DNA from: Obrimoposthia wandeli | Lineage: Eukaryota | Reading direction: 5' to 3' | DNA length: 64,000 bases | Assembly: GCA_977020255.1 (NCBI GenBank) | Contig: CDROCS010000410.1 | Span: forward strand, 434,001-498,000 | In this document: positions 25,777-33,388 of the stretch, piece by piece | How the letters are laid out: each line of letters begins with the position of its first letter | Position numbering within the stretch: the stretch's first letter is position 1 | The notes under the pieces: model-generated | What the model saw: only the letters and a program-made list of their open reading frames with translations | Told to the model about the DNA's origin: nothing | Database searches by the model: none | Position numbers and translations under genes: made by a program

Positions 25777-27105
25777 TTACGTAGCAATTGGCGAATTTGA
25801 TGATTGTGCGGTTAAAAAGGGCAGCAGTAATAAACCCACCCCCCCTGCAGCGCAGGAGATAACCGTAAAAAAGCCATTCCAATGATACTGCTCCATTATC
25901 AGGGCTAAGGGATAACCAGCCAACGCTGCCCCCATGTAAGCAAATAATCCGACGAAACCAGTCGCAGCTCCCACTGAATCTTTATGTGAGCATTCAGCCG
26001 CCGCCATACCTATTAGCATCTGCGGCCCAAATACAAAAAAGCCAATCGCAAAAAAGCAGGCAGCTTGGAGCACAAAATTTATCATCGGCATTAACCATAA
26101 AGCAGCAACAGCTAAAAATAGCCCGAGGGAAAATATTAGATTCATGGGTCCTCGATTCCCACCAAAAATCTTATCAGACCCCCAACCAGCGACCAATGAC
26201 CCAATAAAACCACCGATTTCAAATAGCGATAAAGCGCTGTTAGCTGTAATTAAGCTGTAATGATACTGTTCGGTAAGATATAAGTTGCCCCAGTCGTTAA
26301 TAGCTGTACGGACAATATAAACAAGTACATAACTGCAAGCTAGCAACCATATGTATTTATTATTTAAGACGTATTTTTTCAGTATTTGCTTGTAATAAAG
26401 TCCCTGCCCTTCATTTTCATGGCTAAGTTCGAGCGTGTCATTACGCCAATATCCTACAGTCGGTAGCCCCATAGACTCGGGTTTATCTCGTAACCGCCAA
26501 CAGATAAACAACCCGACCACCACCGCCAATATACCAGGGATAATAAAACCGTAACGCCAATTATAATGCAAGGTAACAAAACCAACTAACAACGGGATCA
26601 ATGCCCCGCCTACATTATGCGCAGTATTCCATAGCGACCACCAGAAACCGCGTTCCGAACGAGAATACCAAGTAGTAAGCAGCTTTGAACAGGAAGGCCA
26701 GCCCCAGCCTTGAAATAAAGCGTTAAGCATCCATAATGCAGTCAACATCAGTACACTGCTTGAAAAACCGAACAAAATGTTAATAATACCAGTCATTATC
26801 AGGCCTAATCCCATAAAATAACGCGGGTTAGAACGATCTGAAACAATACCAGAAAAGAATTTCGAGAAGCCGTAAGTAATATAAAATAGCGTGCCCATCA
26901 TACCTATATCAGCTTTATCTAAACCAAGATCTACGATCATCGCTGGCATTGCATAGTTAAAGCTTTTACGCGTAAAGTAAAACATCGCATAGCCAATATA
27001 CATAGTAAACATTATATGCACGCGCCAGTATTTATACAGTGCATCAACCTGTTTAGGATCATCAACCTGCGGGCTATTTGACTCTGATTTTAAAAAATGG
27101 ATCAT
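25777..27105 (-). CDS. uhpC: Hexose-phosphate sensor/MFS protein UhpC
   Basis: YFTRKSFN, WYSRSERG, FVFGPQMLIGMAAAE. Confidence 0.93.
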   Translation of the reverse strand: MIHFLKSESNSPQVDDPKQVDALYKYWRVHIMFTMYIGYAMFYFTRKSFNYAMPAMIVDLGLDKADIGMMGTLFYITYGFSKFFSGIVSDRSNPRYFMGLGLIMTGIINILFGFSSSVLMLTALWMLNALFQGWGWPSCSKLLTTWYSRSERGFWWSLWNTAHNVGGALIPLLVGFVTLHYNWRYGFIIPGILAVVVGLFICWRLRDKPESMGLPTVGYWRNDTLELSHENEGQGLYYKQILKKYVLNNKYIWLLACSYVLVYIVRTAINDWGNLYLTEQYHYSLITANSALSLFEIGGFIGSLVAGWGSDKIFGGNRGPMNLIFSLGLFLAVAALWLMPMINFVLQAACFFAIGFFVFGPQMLIGMAAAECSHKDSVGAATGFVGLFAYMGAALAGYPLALIMEQYHWNGFFTVISCAAGGVGLLLLPFLTAQSSNSPIAT

Positions 27106-27147: not shown

Positions 27148-28659
27148 TTACAGGATCGGTAAAATCACCTTCAATTCGGTTCCGGGTTGTTGGCTATCAG
27201 ACTGCGTTGTTAATATGAATTTTCCACCCAGTACTTGTACCCGCTCGCTAATGCCGCGTAAACCCAATCCGGTTAAAGTATCTTCCGGTTTAAATCCAAT
27301 GCCGTTATCTTTAACTGTCAGGTGAGCTTCCTCCTGAAATGTTAACGTGATAGTTGCTTCGGTAGCTTGCGCATATTTGACCATATTATTTAACGCTTCC
27401 TGGCAGATCCGGTACAGAGTGATATTCGTGGCATCGCTAAGTTCGGTATTCACTGGTTCCGGTTCATTCCAAATAATGGTAGTTTTTATCCCGTTAGCTT
27501 CACATTCTAACTCGCGTACAAGCTCCTGAACTGCTTGCTTAAGGCCGAGATCATCTAAGGTTTTTGGGCGCAAACGAGTTAGTAGGTCTTTAGTGGTATC
27601 GTAAATATTAAGGGATAACGTTTCAATCGTTGTAGCGCAGCGTTCCCCCACCAGCGTATTTTCAACACGCTTGATGATACTCGCTTGAGTACGGATCGCT
27701 GTAATGTTTTGGCCAATTTCATCGTGTAATTCTCTGGCAATATCACGGCGCACTGATTCTTCTGCTTTAATAAGCTCTCGGGATAAACTGTGATTCCGAT
27801 CTAACTCGTGACGTAGTTGTTGATTCAGTTCCCGCTGGCGCTGAATACCCATCCCTAATAATATACCAGTCAAGCTTTGTGCCAAAAGAGACAGCAGCAG
27901 ATCTGTGATTTCCATATGACTAGTACCGTTACGCGCGGCAATTAATGCGATGCTGTTAAGCAAGGTGCCGAGCAGCGCCCCCTTCCAGCCGTAGCGAAAC
28001 GCCAACACTATGATAGGAATGGCTAAACAAAAAGGGGCAAAACGACGCAATTCATCCGGTAGACCGAGCTGCACAATAATATTAAGTGCAAATAGCAGCA
28101 TATAAAAAATAATATGACGACTGCGCAGTTCCACGGGTTTGGCGATTAACTCGGCCGTTAACGGGGTCCAAACATTTTGGAACAAATAACTCCATAATAA
28201 ATAGCAAGTTGGAACCAGCATTAAACCACCCGTAACGCTGACTAAAAACACCATACCAACAGAATCGACCCAAAATCCTAGTATCAAGGTATTCAACAAA
28301 GCAGCAATTAATATCACAGCTCCCATCCCGCTTAACCTGCGTAACTGCGAACCATAATAATATTGTTGCGCCCACCACACTAAAGGAATACTACAGATAC
28401 TAGCAACGATAACCGCGAACCACTGCGGTTGCTCAAGTAAGAGCGCTAATGACACCATTAACCATAATTCTGCGCTGTATATTGCAGGCCAAAATCGTTT
28501 AGCTGCATGCAAAGAGATACCAAGACGAAGCGCAAAGGGAAAAAATAAAATAGCCAATTCTGGCTCAGAAATAAAAGAATAAGACAACACCCACAAACAG
28601 AACCAACTGCACGATACCAGCAGCCAAGTGCATAATGATGTTACCCAAATATTAGGCAT
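27148..28659 (-). CDS. uhpB: Sensor histidine kinase UhpB
   Basis: MASE1-like TM region, IARELHDEIGQ, RICQEALNN, DNGIGF, GLGLRG. Confidence 0.93.
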   Translation of the reverse strand: MPNIWVTSLCTWLLVSCSWFCLWVLSYSFISEPELAILFFPFALRLGISLHAAKRFWPAIYSAELWLMVSLALLLEQPQWFAVIVASICSIPLVWWAQQYYYGSQLRRLSGMGAVILIAALLNTLILGFWVDSVGMVFLVSVTGGLMLVPTCYLLWSYLFQNVWTPLTAELIAKPVELRSRHIIFYMLLFALNIIVQLGLPDELRRFAPFCLAIPIIVLAFRYGWKGALLGTLLNSIALIAARNGTSHMEITDLLLSLLAQSLTGILLGMGIQRQRELNQQLRHELDRNHSLSRELIKAEESVRRDIARELHDEIGQNITAIRTQASIIKRVENTLVGERCATTIETLSLNIYDTTKDLLTRLRPKTLDDLGLKQAVQELVRELECEANGIKTTIIWNEPEPVNTELSDATNITLYRICQEALNNMVKYAQATEATITLTFQEEAHLTVKDNGIGFKPEDTLTGLGLRGISERVQVLGGKFILTTQSDSQQPGTELKVILPIL

Positions 28660-29268
28660 CTATAGCGTTTCACAAGCAAAGTGTCTTGCCAATTCAACAT
28701 TGTTTTTGACGTTAAGCTTATCCATGGCATTAGCACGATGTACGTGCACCGTTTTATGGCTTAAACCAAGACGCGCCGCCGCTGTTTTTACATCCAAGCC
28801 TTGGGCCAACATTTCTCCGACTTGATGCTCACGCTTGGTCAGTTGAGTGATTGATTTTCTTCCACGGTCTGGTTTCACTAGCTGCATAGTTATATCCGGA
28901 GTTAAATAACAACCACCACTGGACACAGTGCGCACAGCCTGTACTAGTTCATCAGGGCTACAGCGCTTAGTTAAATAACCGCGTGCTCCCAGCTCCAACG
29001 CTTTTTCTACAATAGCAACAGAATCGTGCACGCTAAGCATTATGCAGGACACGCCCTTAGGTAGATCGGCTAATAAGGAAAGGCCACTCTCATTGGGCAT
29101 GGAAATATCAATAATACATACGTCCGCATTCAGGCCAGGTAGACCGTTACGCGCTTCTGCTGCAGAGCTGAACTCTCCGCTAATCTCGATATCGGTTTCC
29201 AGTGACAGCAGCTGTGCAAATCCAGAACGCACAATGACGTGATCATCAACAAGGGCGACTTTGATCAT
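28660..29268 (-). CDS. uhpA: Response regulator UhpA
   Basis: [30 protein letters not shown], Lux[16 protein letters not shown]. Confidence 0.95.
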
Positions 29269-29352
29269 ATTGATATATCCAAAGAAAATGATAAAAACGT
29301 AAATTACCCCTATACAACCACGTAAGCAATAGCAGAGAGGTAAACTGAATGA

Positions 29353-30759
29353 TTAAACAGCATCACCTGCCGCTAACATATCGCGATGTATACGTTTTTC
29401 ATGGCGGATCTTCTTCTCTTCAGCAATTGCAACAAACAGTAGTAAAACAATACAAGCAACAGCCGAAGCATCTAATGCGGCAAATGTACCAGCCCAACCA
29501 GTAAGACCGAAGATAGGAGTGCCATCGGCAATCATACCTAGCCCTAGTTTGGCAAAACTATCACCGATAAGGTAAGCAAATGTACCTTTCACACCATCGG
29601 CTACGCTGATTGCTTTTTTCGGCACAAAACCAACAGCAGCAACACCAATTAGCAACTGCGGACCAAATACCAAGAAACCAAGTACAAACAGTGAACCCAG
29701 GTACATATATTCATTGGCTGCAGTTCGGTAAAATTCTAAAGCAAAAATAATGAGGACTAAAGATACACAAGCAACAATCGCGCGACGGCCGTTAGCGAGG
29801 TCAGAAAGATAACCCCACATCAATGTGCCTACTAGCGCCCCGACCTCAAACAAGGTAAAACCGGTAATAGCAACTTCTTTAGAAAGACCAAGTTCTTGGA
29901 ATGCATATACCGTAGACCACTGATCGATACCAATACGCACGATATACAGGAAGATATTCGCAAAACATAATAGCCAAATCACTTTGTTTTTCAGTACGTA
30001 TTTAACGAATATTTCACGTTTAGTCATCTGATTTTCTTCAGCTTCAATATCTTCAGCGCTGATTTCTTCATCAAATAGTTCTTCAACTGTACCTAAACCG
30101 TAAGCTTCTGGAGAATCATTACCGTAACGTAGGCCAATAAAACCAATCACGATGGCAATGATAGACGGGAAGATAAACATACCAATAACGTGACCACCAA
30201 ATAGGTAGTTAGAGCCGAATAGTGCAACACCCGCTGCAGCCGCCCCACCAACGTTGTGTGACATGTTCCATAAACCCAAATAAGAGCCGCGTTTGTTACG
30301 TGGCGTCCATTTAGTAATGGTTGAATAACTTGACGGTCCACCAGTACTTTGAAAGAAACCGCTTAAACCATAAAAAGCCATCATTAAGAATAAGCTGACA
30401 CCTGAACCGCCCATGCTAACACTGAAACCTATCATGGCAATACCGGATAAGATCAACATAAATGGTAAAAACTGTTTAGTATTTTTACCGTCAGCATAAT
30501 AGGAAACCACTGTTTTCCCAATACCGTAAGTGATAGAAAAGCCCAGACCGATCATACCCAGCTCAGTCATTGATAAACCATAAGTCGTGATCATGTCATT
30601 TTGAGCAATGTTAAAATTCTTGCGAATTAAGTACATAGCCATGTAACCGATAAACACCACTAGGTATGACTGAATGAATGGTTTGAACCACATTTTACGA
30701 CGTTCTTCGACGGGCAGATTAAGGGTCGGTTTTCTGACCTGGTCTAACAGCTTAAACAT
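29353..30759 (-). CDS. uhpT: Hexose-6-phosphate:phosphate antiporter UhpT
   Basis: [41 protein letters not shown]. Confidence 0.95.
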
Positions 30760-30866
30760 ATGAAATCCTCAATAGGTTTATTAGATGCATGTTTATCGAA
30801 AGCTGCTCATGATTGCACTCGATAAACGGAGACCGGTTGAGTTTCGTTCAACCAGATATGCCACAA

Positions 30867-30931
30867 AGTTTAAAGGGTTAATGTTGCAGAGGCTTGAGAA
30901 GCCGGCTTATTGCTATTAGGAAAAATTCCTA
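30867..30931 (-). promoter_or_regulatory. UhpA-dependent promoter of uhpT
   Basis: TAGGAA-AAA-TTCCTA palindrome (30917-30931), TTCTCAAGCC, then 18 nt to the -10 TAAACT (30872-30867). Confidence 0.7.
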
Positions 30932-30955
30932 GCTTTAGTCTTTCTGTTTCAGAAC

Positions 30956-30971
30956 TGTGGTCAAGATCATG
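30956..30971. promoter_or_regulatory. CRP site upstream of uhpT
   Basis: TGTGG-N6-TCATG centred about 103.5 nt upstream of the predicted start, the CRP position known for E. coli uhpT. Confidence 0.55.
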
Positions 30972-30989
30972 TTTTCCAAACCGCAGGAG

Positions 30990-32186
30990 TTAACAGTAAG
31001 CTCTTGCCAGTGTACCGCTAGTGCTGATACAGAATTCTTGTGCATATGCTGGGATAAACACGGCTTGGCCTTTATTAAAGACCATCTCTTCACCAGAGCT
31101 ATGCTCTAACGATACCGAGGCGTCAAGGGCAAATAGTATTTCAGCTGTATCAACTTTAAGTGGTTTTTTTTGCGGTCGTTTATAAACTGAAAAGCAGAAA
31201 TCAGCCACTGGTACCTGATAGTGCTCACTGTTATGATCGATAACTGGATCTAGGCATAATGTCTCGTACTTAAGCGCTTTAAAACTGGTTTTATCGATAA
31301 GTTCAGCGATATCTATATATTTAGGGGTTAAGCCCGCACGTAGTACATTATCTGAGTTAGCCATTATCTCTAATGCCGTACCGTGAATATAAGCGTGAGG
31401 AGTACCAGCATCTAAAAACATTGCTTGACCCGGTTGCAGAGTCACCGTGTGCAAAAATAATGGTGAAAATAGGCCTATGTCTTCTGGGTACTGGTCTTTT
31501 AGCTGCCGAATTAACTGAAAACGCGTGCCAATCTGCTGCTCTGCATAATGCAATAGATTCGCTACAGCCCGGTCTTTCTGTGTTCCTTTCTGGCTTAATA
31601 CCGAGGAAAAAAATTGTGCCAATCCCAGCTCAGATAAGTCGGCTTTAAAAATGTGAAGCGCGGTATTTAAACTGCTGCTATCTAAAGTGGTAAAGTCATC
31701 AGCTATCGCTTGTAGGTCTCTAAAACCGTTCATAGCCTGATACTCAGTTAACGCAAATACTAGTTCTGGTTTATGATTTGCATCGCGATAATTACGGTTA
31801 GGATCGTTTTGAGCAATACCTGATTTCTGCTCCAAAGCAAAACCAGTTTCTGCCTGTTGTTTATTCGGATGTACTTGTACTGACAACGCTTTTTCGGCTG
31901 CTAATACTTTAAACAAAAAAGGCATCGCTTTAAAAGCTGCAGACCGACCTAGAATAGCCTCAATATCTGAAGCTATAAAATCAGAAAGAAAAATTTCATG
32001 ATCACCTTGGTGGATCTTGGAACAGCCGTTAGGGTGATCACCCATCCACATCTCTGCCTGTGGTAGCTGCTGGGGATTAGCCGTATCAAAAAGTTCTGTC
32101 ATTGAATCAGTGCTTCCCCAAGCGTAATTTTGAATTGTATTGTTCATTAGAAAGAAGTTTGATTGCGGGTGTTTCATGAGGTTCAC
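30990..32186 (-). CDS. manA: Mannose-6-phosphate isomerase, class I
   Basis: IQNYAWGS, AEMWMGDHP, PFLFKVLAAEKALSVQVHP, NHKPEL, EIMANSDNVLRAGLTPK. Confidence 0.95.
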   Translation of the reverse strand: MNLMKHPQSNFFLMNNTIQNYAWGSTDSMTELFDTANPQQLPQAEMWMGDHPNGCSKIHQGDHEIFLSDFIASDIEAILGRSAAFKAMPFLFKVLAAEKALSVQVHPNKQQAETGFALEQKSGIAQNDPNRNYRDANHKPELVFALTEYQAMNGFRDLQAIADDFTTLDSSSLNTALHIFKADLSELGLAQFFSSVLSQKGTQKDRAVANLLHYAEQQIGTRFQLIRQLKDQYPEDIGLFSPLFLHTVTLQPGQAMFLDAGTPHAYIHGTALEIMANSDNVLRAGLTPKYIDIAELIDKTSFKALKYETLCLDPVIDHNSEHYQVPVADFCFSVYKRPQKKPLKVDTAEILFALDASVSLEHSSGEEMVFNKGQAVFIPAYAQEFCISTSGTLARAYC

Positions 32187-32229
32187 GGCCTTAGCTGCGC
32201 AGATGCAGATAGTTGATCAGGAACGTGAA

Positions 32230-32288
32230 ATTTTAAATTTTATATCTCAGTTTGGCTTGAGAAAGGTGCCTAAATCCATTAGGAAAAA
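32230..32288 (-). promoter_or_regulatory. UhpA-type promoter upstream of manA
   Basis: Same TTTTTCCTAAT-N14-TTCTCAAGCC-N18-(-10 TAAAAT) layout as at uhpT. Confidence 0.6.
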
Positions 32289-32456
32289 GGCTTAGTTTTT
32301 GATGGTTTATGTATAAAATGAGGAGCTGGAATGAATGTAATTGACGTTATCACCGAAAGCGTACTCGGTAATAAGTTATTACCAGAGTACACCTTTAGGT
32401 CTTAATCTAAATGAACTTGCGTTATATAGAAGCCAGGTGAAGTAAATATGAATGCA

Positions 32457-33122
32457 TTATACCCTGCTAACTTTTGCACTGTAAATTGAATAAGAAAATG
32501 CCAATAGCAAACAAATACCTGCGGGAATATATAGAGCATAAAAATCTAACTGACTGAAAAAGTATGCCCCTAATGAACCACCTGAAATGAAACCGATTAT
32601 GATGAGGATAAACAAAGATGCCTTTCTTTTATCAAACCCTTCACCTCTTAATCTTGCTCCCAGCATAATACCCAAATCCGTAAATATACCGGTTAAATGT
32701 GTTGTACGGATCACCGCGCCACTGTAAGTCGTGACCAGTGCATTTTGTAAGCCACACGCCGCTGAAACCAAATAATTGCCCTGCACTGCACCGTCAACTA
32801 AGAAATATATCGACCCCAAGATAAGCATGCCCTCTAAAACAAGCAGACCACTGTAGTTACGCCCCAGTTTTAATGCGCCACTACGCAGGAAATAACCCGA
32901 TATAACAGAGCCAACAAGGAAACTAAGAATAACGAACGCTAAATGCAGCACATCAGAACCATTGGCGTTAACAAAACCAGTGCCAAGCAGTGTCGCGGTA
33001 CCAGATAAATGGGAAACAGCTTGGTGTTTGAAACCTAATAAACCAATGGAATTAATCAGCCCAGCAACCAGTGCCAACACAAACGAACCATATTCTACCC
33101 AGCGCGGTAATTTTGTAATCAC
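32457..33122 (-). CDS. YoaK/DUF1275 family membrane protein
   Basis: VSHLSGTATLLG, CGLQNA, VIRTTHLTGIFTDLG. Confidence 0.88.
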   Translation of the reverse strand: MITKLPRWVEYGSFVLALVAGLINSIGLLGFKHQAVSHLSGTATLLGTGFVNANGSDVLHLAFVILSFLVGSVISGYFLRSGALKLGRNYSGLLVLEGMLILGSIYFLVDGAVQGNYLVSAACGLQNALVTTYSGAVIRTTHLTGIFTDLGIMLGARLRGEGFDKRKASLFILIIIGFISGGSLGAYFFSQLDFYALYIPAGICLLLAFSYSIYSAKVSRV

Positions 33123-33388
33123 GACTATCCTTTAAGCCTCTAACAGCTTGTTAAATGGAATAGCGTATACCGTCAATTCCACTGTCACTTTATTACCCTG
33201 AACAGTAACAAATTTAGTGCTAATTACCAATTGAGAGTCGAATATCCCTATCTTAAATCAAACAAAACACAGGGAAAAGTACAAGGCTAGTAATACTGTA
33301 TATAAAATTAGCAGGTCTATTGGTACATCTCGTTATCATGGTTCCAAAAATGCAGCACTGATCTTGTCCCTTATCCACTTATGCAACA

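What the first reader, a model, noticed from the sequence alone, without database searches (positions are those of the whole stretch)
30867..32288. manA appears to be a second UhpA-regulated gene: mannose-6-phosphate scavenging module
Seen: upstream of both uhpT and manA the minus strand reads TTTTTCCTAAT-N14-TTCTCAAGCC-N18-(-10) with identical spacing (uhpT: 30925-30915, 30900-30891, TAAACT 30872-30867; manA: 32288-32278, 32263-32254, TAAAAT 32235-32230). This matches my recollection of the E. coli uhpT promoter (TTTTCC-N18-ATCTCAGGCC-N18-TACAAT), and a CRP-like site lies at -103.5 for uhpT only. The distal half-site at manA is degenerate. Established: UhpT imports G6P, F6P and M6P, and uhpT is the classical sole UhpA target in E. 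coli. Inference: manA was recruited into the Uhp regulon so that imported mannose-6-phosphate is fed into glycolysis, possibly with altered UhpC specificity.
Basis: partly seen in the sequence, partly recalled or inferred. Interest (0 to 1): 0.7.

Follow-up and report, generated by a model that had tools for sequence, protein, structure and literature searches.

The report
Second UhpA-type promoter drives manA
In this Psychromonas-like bacterium, and in many Vibrio species, a mannose-6-phosphate isomerase gene beside the sugar-phosphate uptake genes has the same activator-dependent promoter as the transporter gene uhpT, so it is very probably switched on together with uptake; this is a tidy but modest extension of a regulon thought to have one target.

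Summary
Window 32288-32254 and 30925-30891 (minus strand) share TTTTTCCTAAT-N14-TTCTCAAGCC exactly, each followed 18 nt later by a -10 hexamer; shuffles expect 0.

[quoted passage not shown] A weight matrix built only from nine uhpT promoters scores the manA site 30.7 bits. The next best of 127,916 window positions scores 7.2, and E. coli's own uhpT promoter scores 19.4.

The window is from a Psychromonas with gene order manA > uhpT > uhpA > uhpB > uhpC.
- P. aquimarina keeps the manA site; in P. ossibalaenae it has decayed.
- In a Vibrio group including V. splendidus, V. crassostreae and V. chagasii the order differs (uhpT-uhpABC-manA). There manA again has a UhpA-type site, plus a CRP site.
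- 28 of 301 Vibrionaceae genomes have exactly two sites.
- In three whole genomes the only exact matches lie before uhpT and manA.
- Fourteen manA copies not linked to uhp lack the site.

Altered UhpC specificity is untested. I found no paper describing this. The scan's earlier notes did not hold it. Modest interest: a new member of a known kind.

The parts
30990..32177 (-). manA, class I mannose-6-phosphate isomerase (395 aa from the ATG at 32177; the ORF lister starts it at GTG 32186)
   Evidence: TIGR00218 289.5 bits against a cut-off of 116.2. Full-length match to Salmonella PMI 2WFP, E 2.4e-95, with the QVHP, KPE and TPHAY motifs kept. The ATG and the AAGGCCGTGAAC stretch before it are conserved in P. 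aquimarina and P. ossibalaenae.
32254..32295 (-). Predicted UhpA-binding region of the manA promoter. Four half-sites: CTAAGC 32295-32290, TTCCTAA 32285-32279, TTTAGGC 32274-32268, TTCTCAAGCC 32263-32254.
   Evidence: Exact shared boxes with the uhpT promoter. [quoted passage not shown] 30.7 bits on the uhpT-only matrix against 7.2 for the best background position. Conserved in P. aquimarina.
32230..32235 (-). -10 hexamer TAAAAT of the manA promoter, 18 nt after the last box; predicted start near 32223
   Evidence: Sequence. Same 18-nt spacing as E. coli TACAAT. No -35-like hexamer: the sigma-70 scan does not call a promoter here.
32290..32318 (-). 29-nt block directly upstream of the UhpA boxes, identical in all three Psychromonas manA promoters; function unknown (UP element or second factor?)
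   Evidence: Alignment A2.
30891..30932 (-). UhpA-binding region of the uhpT promoter: CTAGGAA 30932-30926, TTCCTAA, ATAAGCC, TTCTCAAGCC 30900-30891
   Evidence: Leave-one-out matrix score 44.6 bits.
30867..30872 (-). -10 hexamer TAAACT of the uhpT promoter; predicted start near 30860
   Evidence: TTAAAcT is conserved in five uhpT promoters.
30956..30971 (-). CRP-like site CATGA-N6-CCACA, centred about 103.5 nt upstream of the predicted uhpT start
   Evidence: Sequence. It aligns with better CRP cores (GTGA-N6-TCAC) in related uhpT promoters.
29353..30759 (-). [quoted passage not shown]
   Evidence: NF007107 815.8 bits, cut-off 497.
28660..29268 (-). uhpA, response regulator
   Evidence: NF007685 284.8 bits, cut-off 258. 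Recognition helix KTVHVHR-N-M-KL identical to E. coli UhpA.
27148..28659 (-). uhpB, sensor kinase/phosphatase
   Evidence: NF008649 729 bits, cut-off 408.
25777..27105 (-). uhpC, glucose-6-phosphate receptor
   Evidence: NF008661 827.1 bits, cut-off 564.

Best explanation
manA in this Psychromonas-like genome has its own UhpA-dependent promoter, built like the uhpT promoter. It has four UhpA half-sites, arranged as an upstream pair and a downstream pair that takes the place of a -35 element, then 18 nt and a -10 hexamer. Inferred mechanism: external hexose-6-phosphate is sensed by UhpC/UhpB; UhpA is phosphorylated, binds both promoters and recruits RNA polymerase; the antiporter UhpT and a dedicated ManA paralogue are then made together. 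ManA converts imported mannose-6-phosphate to fructose-6-phosphate, which feeds glycolysis and prevents build-up of a sugar phosphate. In the window, manA is not followed by the terminator hairpin seen in relatives, so transcription from the manA promoter may also read into uhpT. Shown here: the sequence architecture, its specificity, its conservation and the gene identities. Inferred: UhpA binding, induction and the physiological role.
For: The shared boxes are exact and not expected by chance. [quoted passage not shown] On the uhpT-only matrix the window manA site scores 30.7 bits and P. aquimarina manA 26.3; the best background position in the window scores 7.2 and the E. coli uhpT promoter 19.4. 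All 12 uhp-linked Vibrio manA loci found through the manA query score 34-44 bits and have a TGTGA-N6-TCAC core 40 nt upstream. G100, G104 and G108 have the site as well. Five manA loci not linked to uhp and nine further paralogue loci have none. The derived pattern matches exactly only before uhpT and manA in Vibrio sp. F13 and P. aquimarina, with 0 hits for the reversed control. Among 301 Vibrionaceae genomes, 90 have a site and 28 have exactly two, 26 of those about 5.3 kb apart on one strand; the reversed control gave 2 hits in all. High-information uhpT positions are the ones kept among manA sites: 4 of 25 against 13 of 18 differences, p 0.0004. The UhpA helix-turn-helix is invariant. UhpT carries G6P, F6P and M6P (PMC10352792; PMC9306846). 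Relatives hold 3-4 manA paralogues, so this copy is a specialised one. The relatives have a terminator hairpin after manA (z -4.8 and -3.3); the window has none.
Against: There is no expression or binding evidence. No public RNA run holds the stretch, and the four RNA runs laid gave 0 reads, which is no test. In P. ossibalaenae the manA site has decayed to 0.9 bits, so the control is dispensable there. Contig C2170 of the same assembly has manA next to uhpT without any site before manA. A strong sigma-70-like match (TTTACA-18-TATAAT, 32485-32456) upstream could give UhpA-independent transcription. One V. splendidus transcriptome lists a manA up and uhpT down in the same contrast, but the paralogue is not identified (PMC13303043). 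The search pattern was derived partly from the manA sites; the matrix was not.
Confidence: 0.78

Rival explanations
1. The manA-proximal element is an inert relic of an old duplication of the uhpT promoter, made when manA was inserted next to uhpT. It no longer controls anything, and manA is expressed from another promoter.
For: The site decayed in P. ossibalaenae. A sigma-70-like promoter match lies at 32485-32456. C2170 has the same gene adjacency without a site.
Against: The spacers have diverged (5 of 14 identical) while the boxes are exact. Core positions are kept between the window and P. aquimarina, and between Psychromonas and Vibrio manA sites. About 28 Vibrionaceae species keep a full site plus a CRP site before manA. 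The sigma-70-like match is not conserved in relatives, whose upstream gene differs.
Confidence: 0.1
2. The shared motif is bound by a regulator other than UhpA, for instance another NarL/FixJ-type or sugar-phosphate-responsive factor, which co-regulates manA and uhpT.
For: No binding data exist for these organisms. A 29-nt block just upstream of the manA boxes is perfectly conserved and unexplained.
Against: The motif aligns base for base, with equal spacing, to the E. coli region described as the UhpA sites. The UhpA recognition helix is identical. The motif is found only at the uhp locus in whole genomes. Psychromonadaceae genomes without this uhp module lack it.
Confidence: 0.05
3. UhpA does control manA, but the purpose is anabolic: making mannose-6-phosphate from imported G6P or F6P for GDP-mannose and surface polysaccharide, not breaking down imported M6P.
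For: The isomerase is reversible (established biochemistry). Nothing in the sequence fixes the direction.
Against: No manB or manC-type genes lie beside it in the window or in relatives. The pairing with a transporter that carries M6P, and the several other manA paralogues, fit a catabolic, substrate-specific copy.
Confidence: 0.07

Closest known systems
E. coli uhpT promoter (UhpA- and CRP-activated; Kadner laboratory)
   Same: Same order and spacing of elements: an upstream half-site pair around TTTTCC, a downstream pair ending in TCTCAxGCC where a -35 would be, then 18 nt to the -10. A cognate UhpABC system is encoded alongside, and the UhpA recognition helix is identical.
   Different: The promoter here drives manA, not the transporter. 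The Psychromonas manA copy has no CRP site, while the Vibrio copy has one. Half-site words are CTAGGA/TTAGG-like here and CCTGG-like in E. coli. In E. coli, uhpT is regarded as the only UhpA target (my knowledge; not contradicted by any paper found).
E. coli / Salmonella manA (class I phosphomannose isomerase)
   Same: Same family and full-length alignment; metal-ligand motifs are kept.
   Different: Enterobacterial manA is a single housekeeping gene not linked to uhp. Here it is one of several paralogues in related genomes and sits inside the uhp cluster. It scores below the enterobacterial equivalog cut-off (424 against 571 bits).
uhpT-uhpABC-manA locus of V. splendidus and related Vibrio species
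   Same: manA with its own UhpA-type site next to the uhp genes; the exact motif occurs only at uhpT and manA in the genome.
   Different: The gene order differs: manA lies after uhpC, not before uhpT. A strong CRP site is present. This manA groups with other Vibrio manA genes in the tree, apart from the Psychromonas copy, although a single origin is not rejected.

Membership tests
UhpA-dependent promoter (E. coli uhpT type) | Upstream (strong) and downstream (weak) UhpA-binding regions in fixed register with the -10 hexamer | tested here: met
   Ungapped alignment of the manA and uhpT promoters with E. coli: 18 nt from TTTTCC to ATCTCAGGCC in E. coli, the same distance in the window, then 18 nt to the -10. 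30.7 bits on the uhpT-only matrix.
UhpA-dependent promoter (E. coli uhpT type) | No usable -35 element, so the promoter depends on its activator | tested here: met
   The sigma-70 consensus scan calls no promoter at 32263-32230. The -35 position is occupied by the TCTCAAGCC box.
UhpA-dependent promoter (E. coli uhpT type) | A cognate UhpA with the same DNA-reading helix is present | tested here: met
   NF007685 scores above its cut-off. KTVHVHR-N-M-KL is invariant across the window, P. aquimarina, Vibrio, C2170 and E. coli.
UhpA-dependent promoter (E. coli uhpT type) | CRP site centred near -103.5 | tested here: not met
   Absent before manA in the three Psychromonas. Present before uhpT in the window and before manA in Vibrio. 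In E. coli CRP stimulates uhpT but is not indispensable for it, unlike UhpA (PMC5352689 abstract), so this does not exclude the promoter type.
UhpA-dependent promoter (E. coli uhpT type) | Binding of phosphorylated UhpA and induction by external glucose-6-phosphate | not testable with these tools
   No RNA data: 0 reads in 4 runs. Needs a gel shift or footprint and reporter assays.
Class I mannose-6-phosphate isomerase (ManA) | Family model above its cut-off and catalytic metal-ligand motifs present | tested here: met
   TIGR00218 289.5 bits against 116.2. Alignment to 2WFP keeps QVHP, KPE and TPHAY. Enzyme activity was not tested.
Uhp hexose-phosphate uptake system (UhpT + UhpABC) | All four components present, each above its curated cut-off | tested here: met
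   UhpT 815.8/497, UhpA 284.8/258, UhpB 729/408, UhpC 827.1/564 bits.

The most novel reading that the evidence does not exclude
Different manA paralogues were recruited independently into the UhpA regulon in Psychromonas (manA before uhpT, no CRP site) and in Vibrio (manA after uhpC, with a CRP site). On this reading, each lineage built a UhpA promoter before its manA separately. That would mark free mannose-6-phosphate as an ecologically important substrate for marine, animal-associated bacteria, and might go with a UhpC that also senses M6P.
Probability: 0.25. Interest if true: 0.55.

Novelty: new member of a known kind. Interest (0 to 1): 0.4.

Why it matters
UhpA is the textbook case of a response regulator with a single target promoter. 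A second target, conserved across species and with a clear metabolic logic, would make the Uhp system a small regulon in marine gammaproteobacteria: uptake is coupled to the one extra enzyme needed for mannose-6-phosphate. It gives a clean natural pair of UhpA promoters, one with and one without CRP help, for studying promoter architecture. It also hints that mannose-6-phosphate is a real nutrient, or a toxic hazard, in these habitats. The claim can be tested directly in culturable strains such as P. aquimarina ATCC BAA-1526, V. splendidus and V. crassostreae. It does not change how the system is thought to work.

Tried and rejected
- **Expression evidence.** No public RNA run holds the stretch. 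Four RNA runs carrying the species label of a DNA holder gave 0 reads on window 28600-33200, which is no test.
- **Primary papers.** The papers on UhpA footprints (PMC135017, PMC94613, PMC176797) are not held. The strong-site and weak-site coordinates therefore rest on a review and my memory.
- **Literature.** Seven searches found no paper that links UhpA and manA. RegPrecise-type regulon databases could not be consulted.
- **Rfam.** No hits on 29200-32600.
- **Other matches in the assembly.** The 2-mismatch match on contig C1717 lies in ORF-poor DNA and is taken as chance. The 2-mismatch match in Vibrio sp. F13 chromosome 1 breaks the last box and was not followed up.
- **Independent recruitment.** The tree splits the uhp-linked manA genes into three groups. 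The AU test does not reject joining the Psychromonas and Vibrio groups into one clade (p 0.10), so convergence is not claimed.
- **Second manA in the window's own organism.** This cannot be settled. G000 is a 1.35 Gb mixed assembly with seven full-length manA hits on different contigs. Relatives were used instead.
- **Terminators.** The simple terminator scan missed the hairpins after manA in relatives because their loops exceed 8 nt. Folding showed them.
- **Earlier scan notes.** Nothing relevant.

Full report
**Observation.** On the minus strand the window encodes, in order:
- a DUF1275 protein (33122-32457);
- manA (32177-30990);
- uhpT (30759-29353);
- uhpA (29268-28660);
- uhpB (28659-27148);
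- uhpC (27105-25777);
- a TorR-like regulator.

The Uhp proteins each score above their curated NCBIfam cut-offs, and manA passes TIGR00218. TTTTTCCTAAT-N14-TTCTCAAGCC occurs at 32288-32254 and at 30925-30891, and nowhere else in the window with up to 3 mismatches; shuffles expect none. Each copy is followed after 18 nt by a -10-like hexamer. The two 14-nt spacers agree at only 5 positions, so the likeness is confined to the boxes.

**Comparison with the experimentally studied promoter.** I fetched the E. coli uhpC-uhpT intergenic region. Eleven promoters align to it without a single gap:
- uhpT of the window, of P. aquimarina and of P. ossibalaenae;
- uhpT of two other contigs of this assembly and of three Vibrio genomes;
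- manA of the window, of P. aquimarina and of Vibrio.

Read in that frame there are four half-sites of the type CTAGGA/TTAGG/CTTGAG (CCTGG/CCTGAG in E. coli). They form an upstream pair and a downstream pair that ends where a -35 would be. This fits the published description of an upstream strong and a downstream weak UhpA site, with a single CRP site further upstream (review PMC4790336). The exact -80/-50/-32 limits are from my memory of Olekhnovich and Kadner 2002, which is not held. The sigma-70 scan calls no promoter at the manA site, as expected for an activator-dependent promoter without a -35. The UhpA proteins of the window, P. aquimarina, Vibrio sp. F13, contig C2170 and E. coli share an identical recognition helix.

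**Specificity.** I built a weight matrix from nine uhpT promoters chosen by gene position only. The scores are:
- window manA site, 30.7 bits;
- next best of 127,916 window positions, 7.2 bits;
- the true uhpT site, 54.2 bits, or 44.6 when left out of the matrix;
- E. coli's own promoter, 19.4 bits when left out.

A pattern distilled from the sites matches exactly only before uhpT and manA in Vibrio sp. F13 and P. aquimarina, and only before uhpT in P. ossibalaenae. The reversed-pattern control gave no hits.

**Relatives.** The manA protein is 83% and 82% identical to those of Psychromonas aquimarina and P. ossibalaenae, so the window is from a Psychromonas. Both species have the same order manA > uhpT > uhpA > uhpB.
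- P. aquimarina keeps the manA site (26.3 bits), with all high-information positions intact.
- In P. ossibalaenae the site has decayed to 0.9 bits. It differs at 12 of 35 positions from P. aquimarina, against 20 of 171 in the flanks (Fisher p 0.003).
- Only 4 of 42 Psychromonadaceae genomes have uhpT at all. The two outside this small clade have other arrangements, no adjacent manA and no such site.

**An independent replicate in Vibrio.** Twelve loci from a related Vibrio group (V. splendidus, V. crassostreae, V. chagasii, V. atlanticus and others) have the order uhpT > uhpA > uhpB > uhpC > manA. Between uhpC and manA lie a CRP core (TGTGA-N6-TCAC) and, 40 nt further on, a UhpA-type site of 34-44 bits. 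I then scanned 301 Vibrionaceae genomes with the pattern, allowing up to 1 mismatch.
- 90 genomes have a site.
- 28 have exactly two sites and none has more.
- In 26 of the 28 the two sites lie about 5.3 kb apart on one strand.
- The reversed control hit twice in all 301 genomes.

I checked three atypical cases, G100, G104 and G108. In each, the second site lies before manA. Five manA genes not linked to uhp and nine further manA paralogue loci have no site. Positions that are conserved among uhpT promoters are the ones conserved between Psychromonas and Vibrio manA sites: 4 of 25 against 13 of 18 differences, p 0.0004.

**What the gene is.** ManA aligns over its whole length with Salmonella phosphomannose isomerase (2WFP, E 2.4e-95) and keeps the QVHP, KPE and TPHAY motifs. 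P. aquimarina and P. ossibalaenae each hold four class I manA genes, and Vibrio sp. F13 holds three. The uhp-linked gene is therefore a dedicated paralogue, not the only isomerase. UhpT is reported to carry G6P, F6P and M6P (PMC10352792; PMC9306846).

**Mechanism proposed.** External hexose phosphate acts through UhpC/UhpB on UhpA. Phosphorylated UhpA binds both promoters, so the antiporter and ManA are made together, and imported M6P is turned into F6P. This chain is inferred from homology; nothing here measures binding or transcription. Two local details are worth noting.
- The Psychromonas manA promoter lacks the CRP site that uhpT has. It would therefore respond to UhpA without catabolite control, unlike the Vibrio version.
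- P. aquimarina and P. ossibalaenae have a hairpin plus U-run after manA (z -3.3 and -4.8). The window has lost that stretch and shows no terminator between manA and uhpT, so transcripts from the manA promoter may continue into uhpT.

**Origin.** In a maximum-likelihood tree of 30 ManA sequences, the uhp-linked genes fall in three places:
- the Psychromonas trio;
- seven Vibrio genes nested among other Vibrio manA genes (support 95/93);
- contig C2170, which groups with another contig of this assembly.

The AU test does not reject one clade for the Psychromonas and Vibrio groups together (p 0.10). One recruitment followed by rearrangement remains possible, as do two independent recruitments.

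**Limits.** No RNA run holds the stretch, and four RNA runs laid on it gave no reads. A strong sigma-70-like match at 32485-32456, inside the end of the DUF1275 gene, could supply UhpA-independent transcription, though it is not conserved in relatives. Contig C2170 shows manA next to uhpT without a site, and P. ossibalaenae has lost the site, so the control is not universal. A V. splendidus transcriptome lists a manA and uhpT moving in opposite directions, but the paralogue is not identified. I found no paper reporting UhpA control of manA; curated regulon databases could not be checked.

**Verdict.** This is a new member of a known kind, a second UhpA-type promoter and regulon member, and is of modest interest.

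Noticed in passing
L019:3880-3920 (P. ossibalaenae manA upstream) against L018: The UhpA boxes before manA in P. ossibalaenae differ from P. aquimarina at 12 of 35 positions, while the flanks differ at 20 of 171 (p 0.003). The change is localised to the site, which looks more like a small replacement or selection against UhpA control than even decay.
   Followed up: partly
window 32290-32318 (-): A 29-nt A/T-rich block directly upstream of the manA UhpA boxes is identical in all three Psychromonas, even where the boxes decayed. It could be an UP element or the site of another factor.
   Followed up: no
window 30825-30860 (-); L018:5385-5480; L019:5390-5480: The uhpT leader starts with a conserved ATCTGGTTGA that pairs with a downstream TCAACC/AACCAG. 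The loop is 7 nt in the window but about 100 nt in P. aquimarina and P. ossibalaenae. This is a conserved 5' stem of unknown role. No Rfam match.
   Followed up: no
L024:5385-8303 (+), Vibrio sp. F13: A 972-aa protein with a type I phosphodiesterase/nucleotide pyrophosphatase domain follows the UhpA-controlled manA in Vibrio. It may belong to the same sugar-phosphate scavenging unit.
   Followed up: no
L092:2511-3650 (-), Vibrionaceae genome G108: A full CRP plus UhpA promoter (52.6 bits) is followed by an IS630-like transposase (HTH plus DDE_3), not by uhpT. It lies 45 kb from uhpC-manA, so an insertion sequence has split the locus.
   Followed up: partly
G000 contigs C2926:15000-24999 (L015) and C2170:84000-93999 (L017): The 1.35 Gb assembly holds at least three different bacteria with uhpT-uhpABC clusters. 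C2926 (41% GC) has no manA beside uhpT. C2170 (34% GC) has manA before uhpT, with a terminator between them and no UhpA site before manA.
   Followed up: partly
window 32456-32485 (-) and about 32355-32385 (-): A near-consensus sigma-70 promoter match (TTTACA-18-TATAAT, 11 of 12) sits in the last codons of the DUF1275 gene. It is followed by a 12-bp hairpin without a clear U-run.
   Followed up: no
G043:C1:2572292-2575735 (L094): Three identical 2-mismatch copies of the pattern, spaced about 1.7 kb apart on one strand in a Psychromonadaceae genome without uhpT. Probably a tandem repeat unrelated to Uhp.
   Followed up: no
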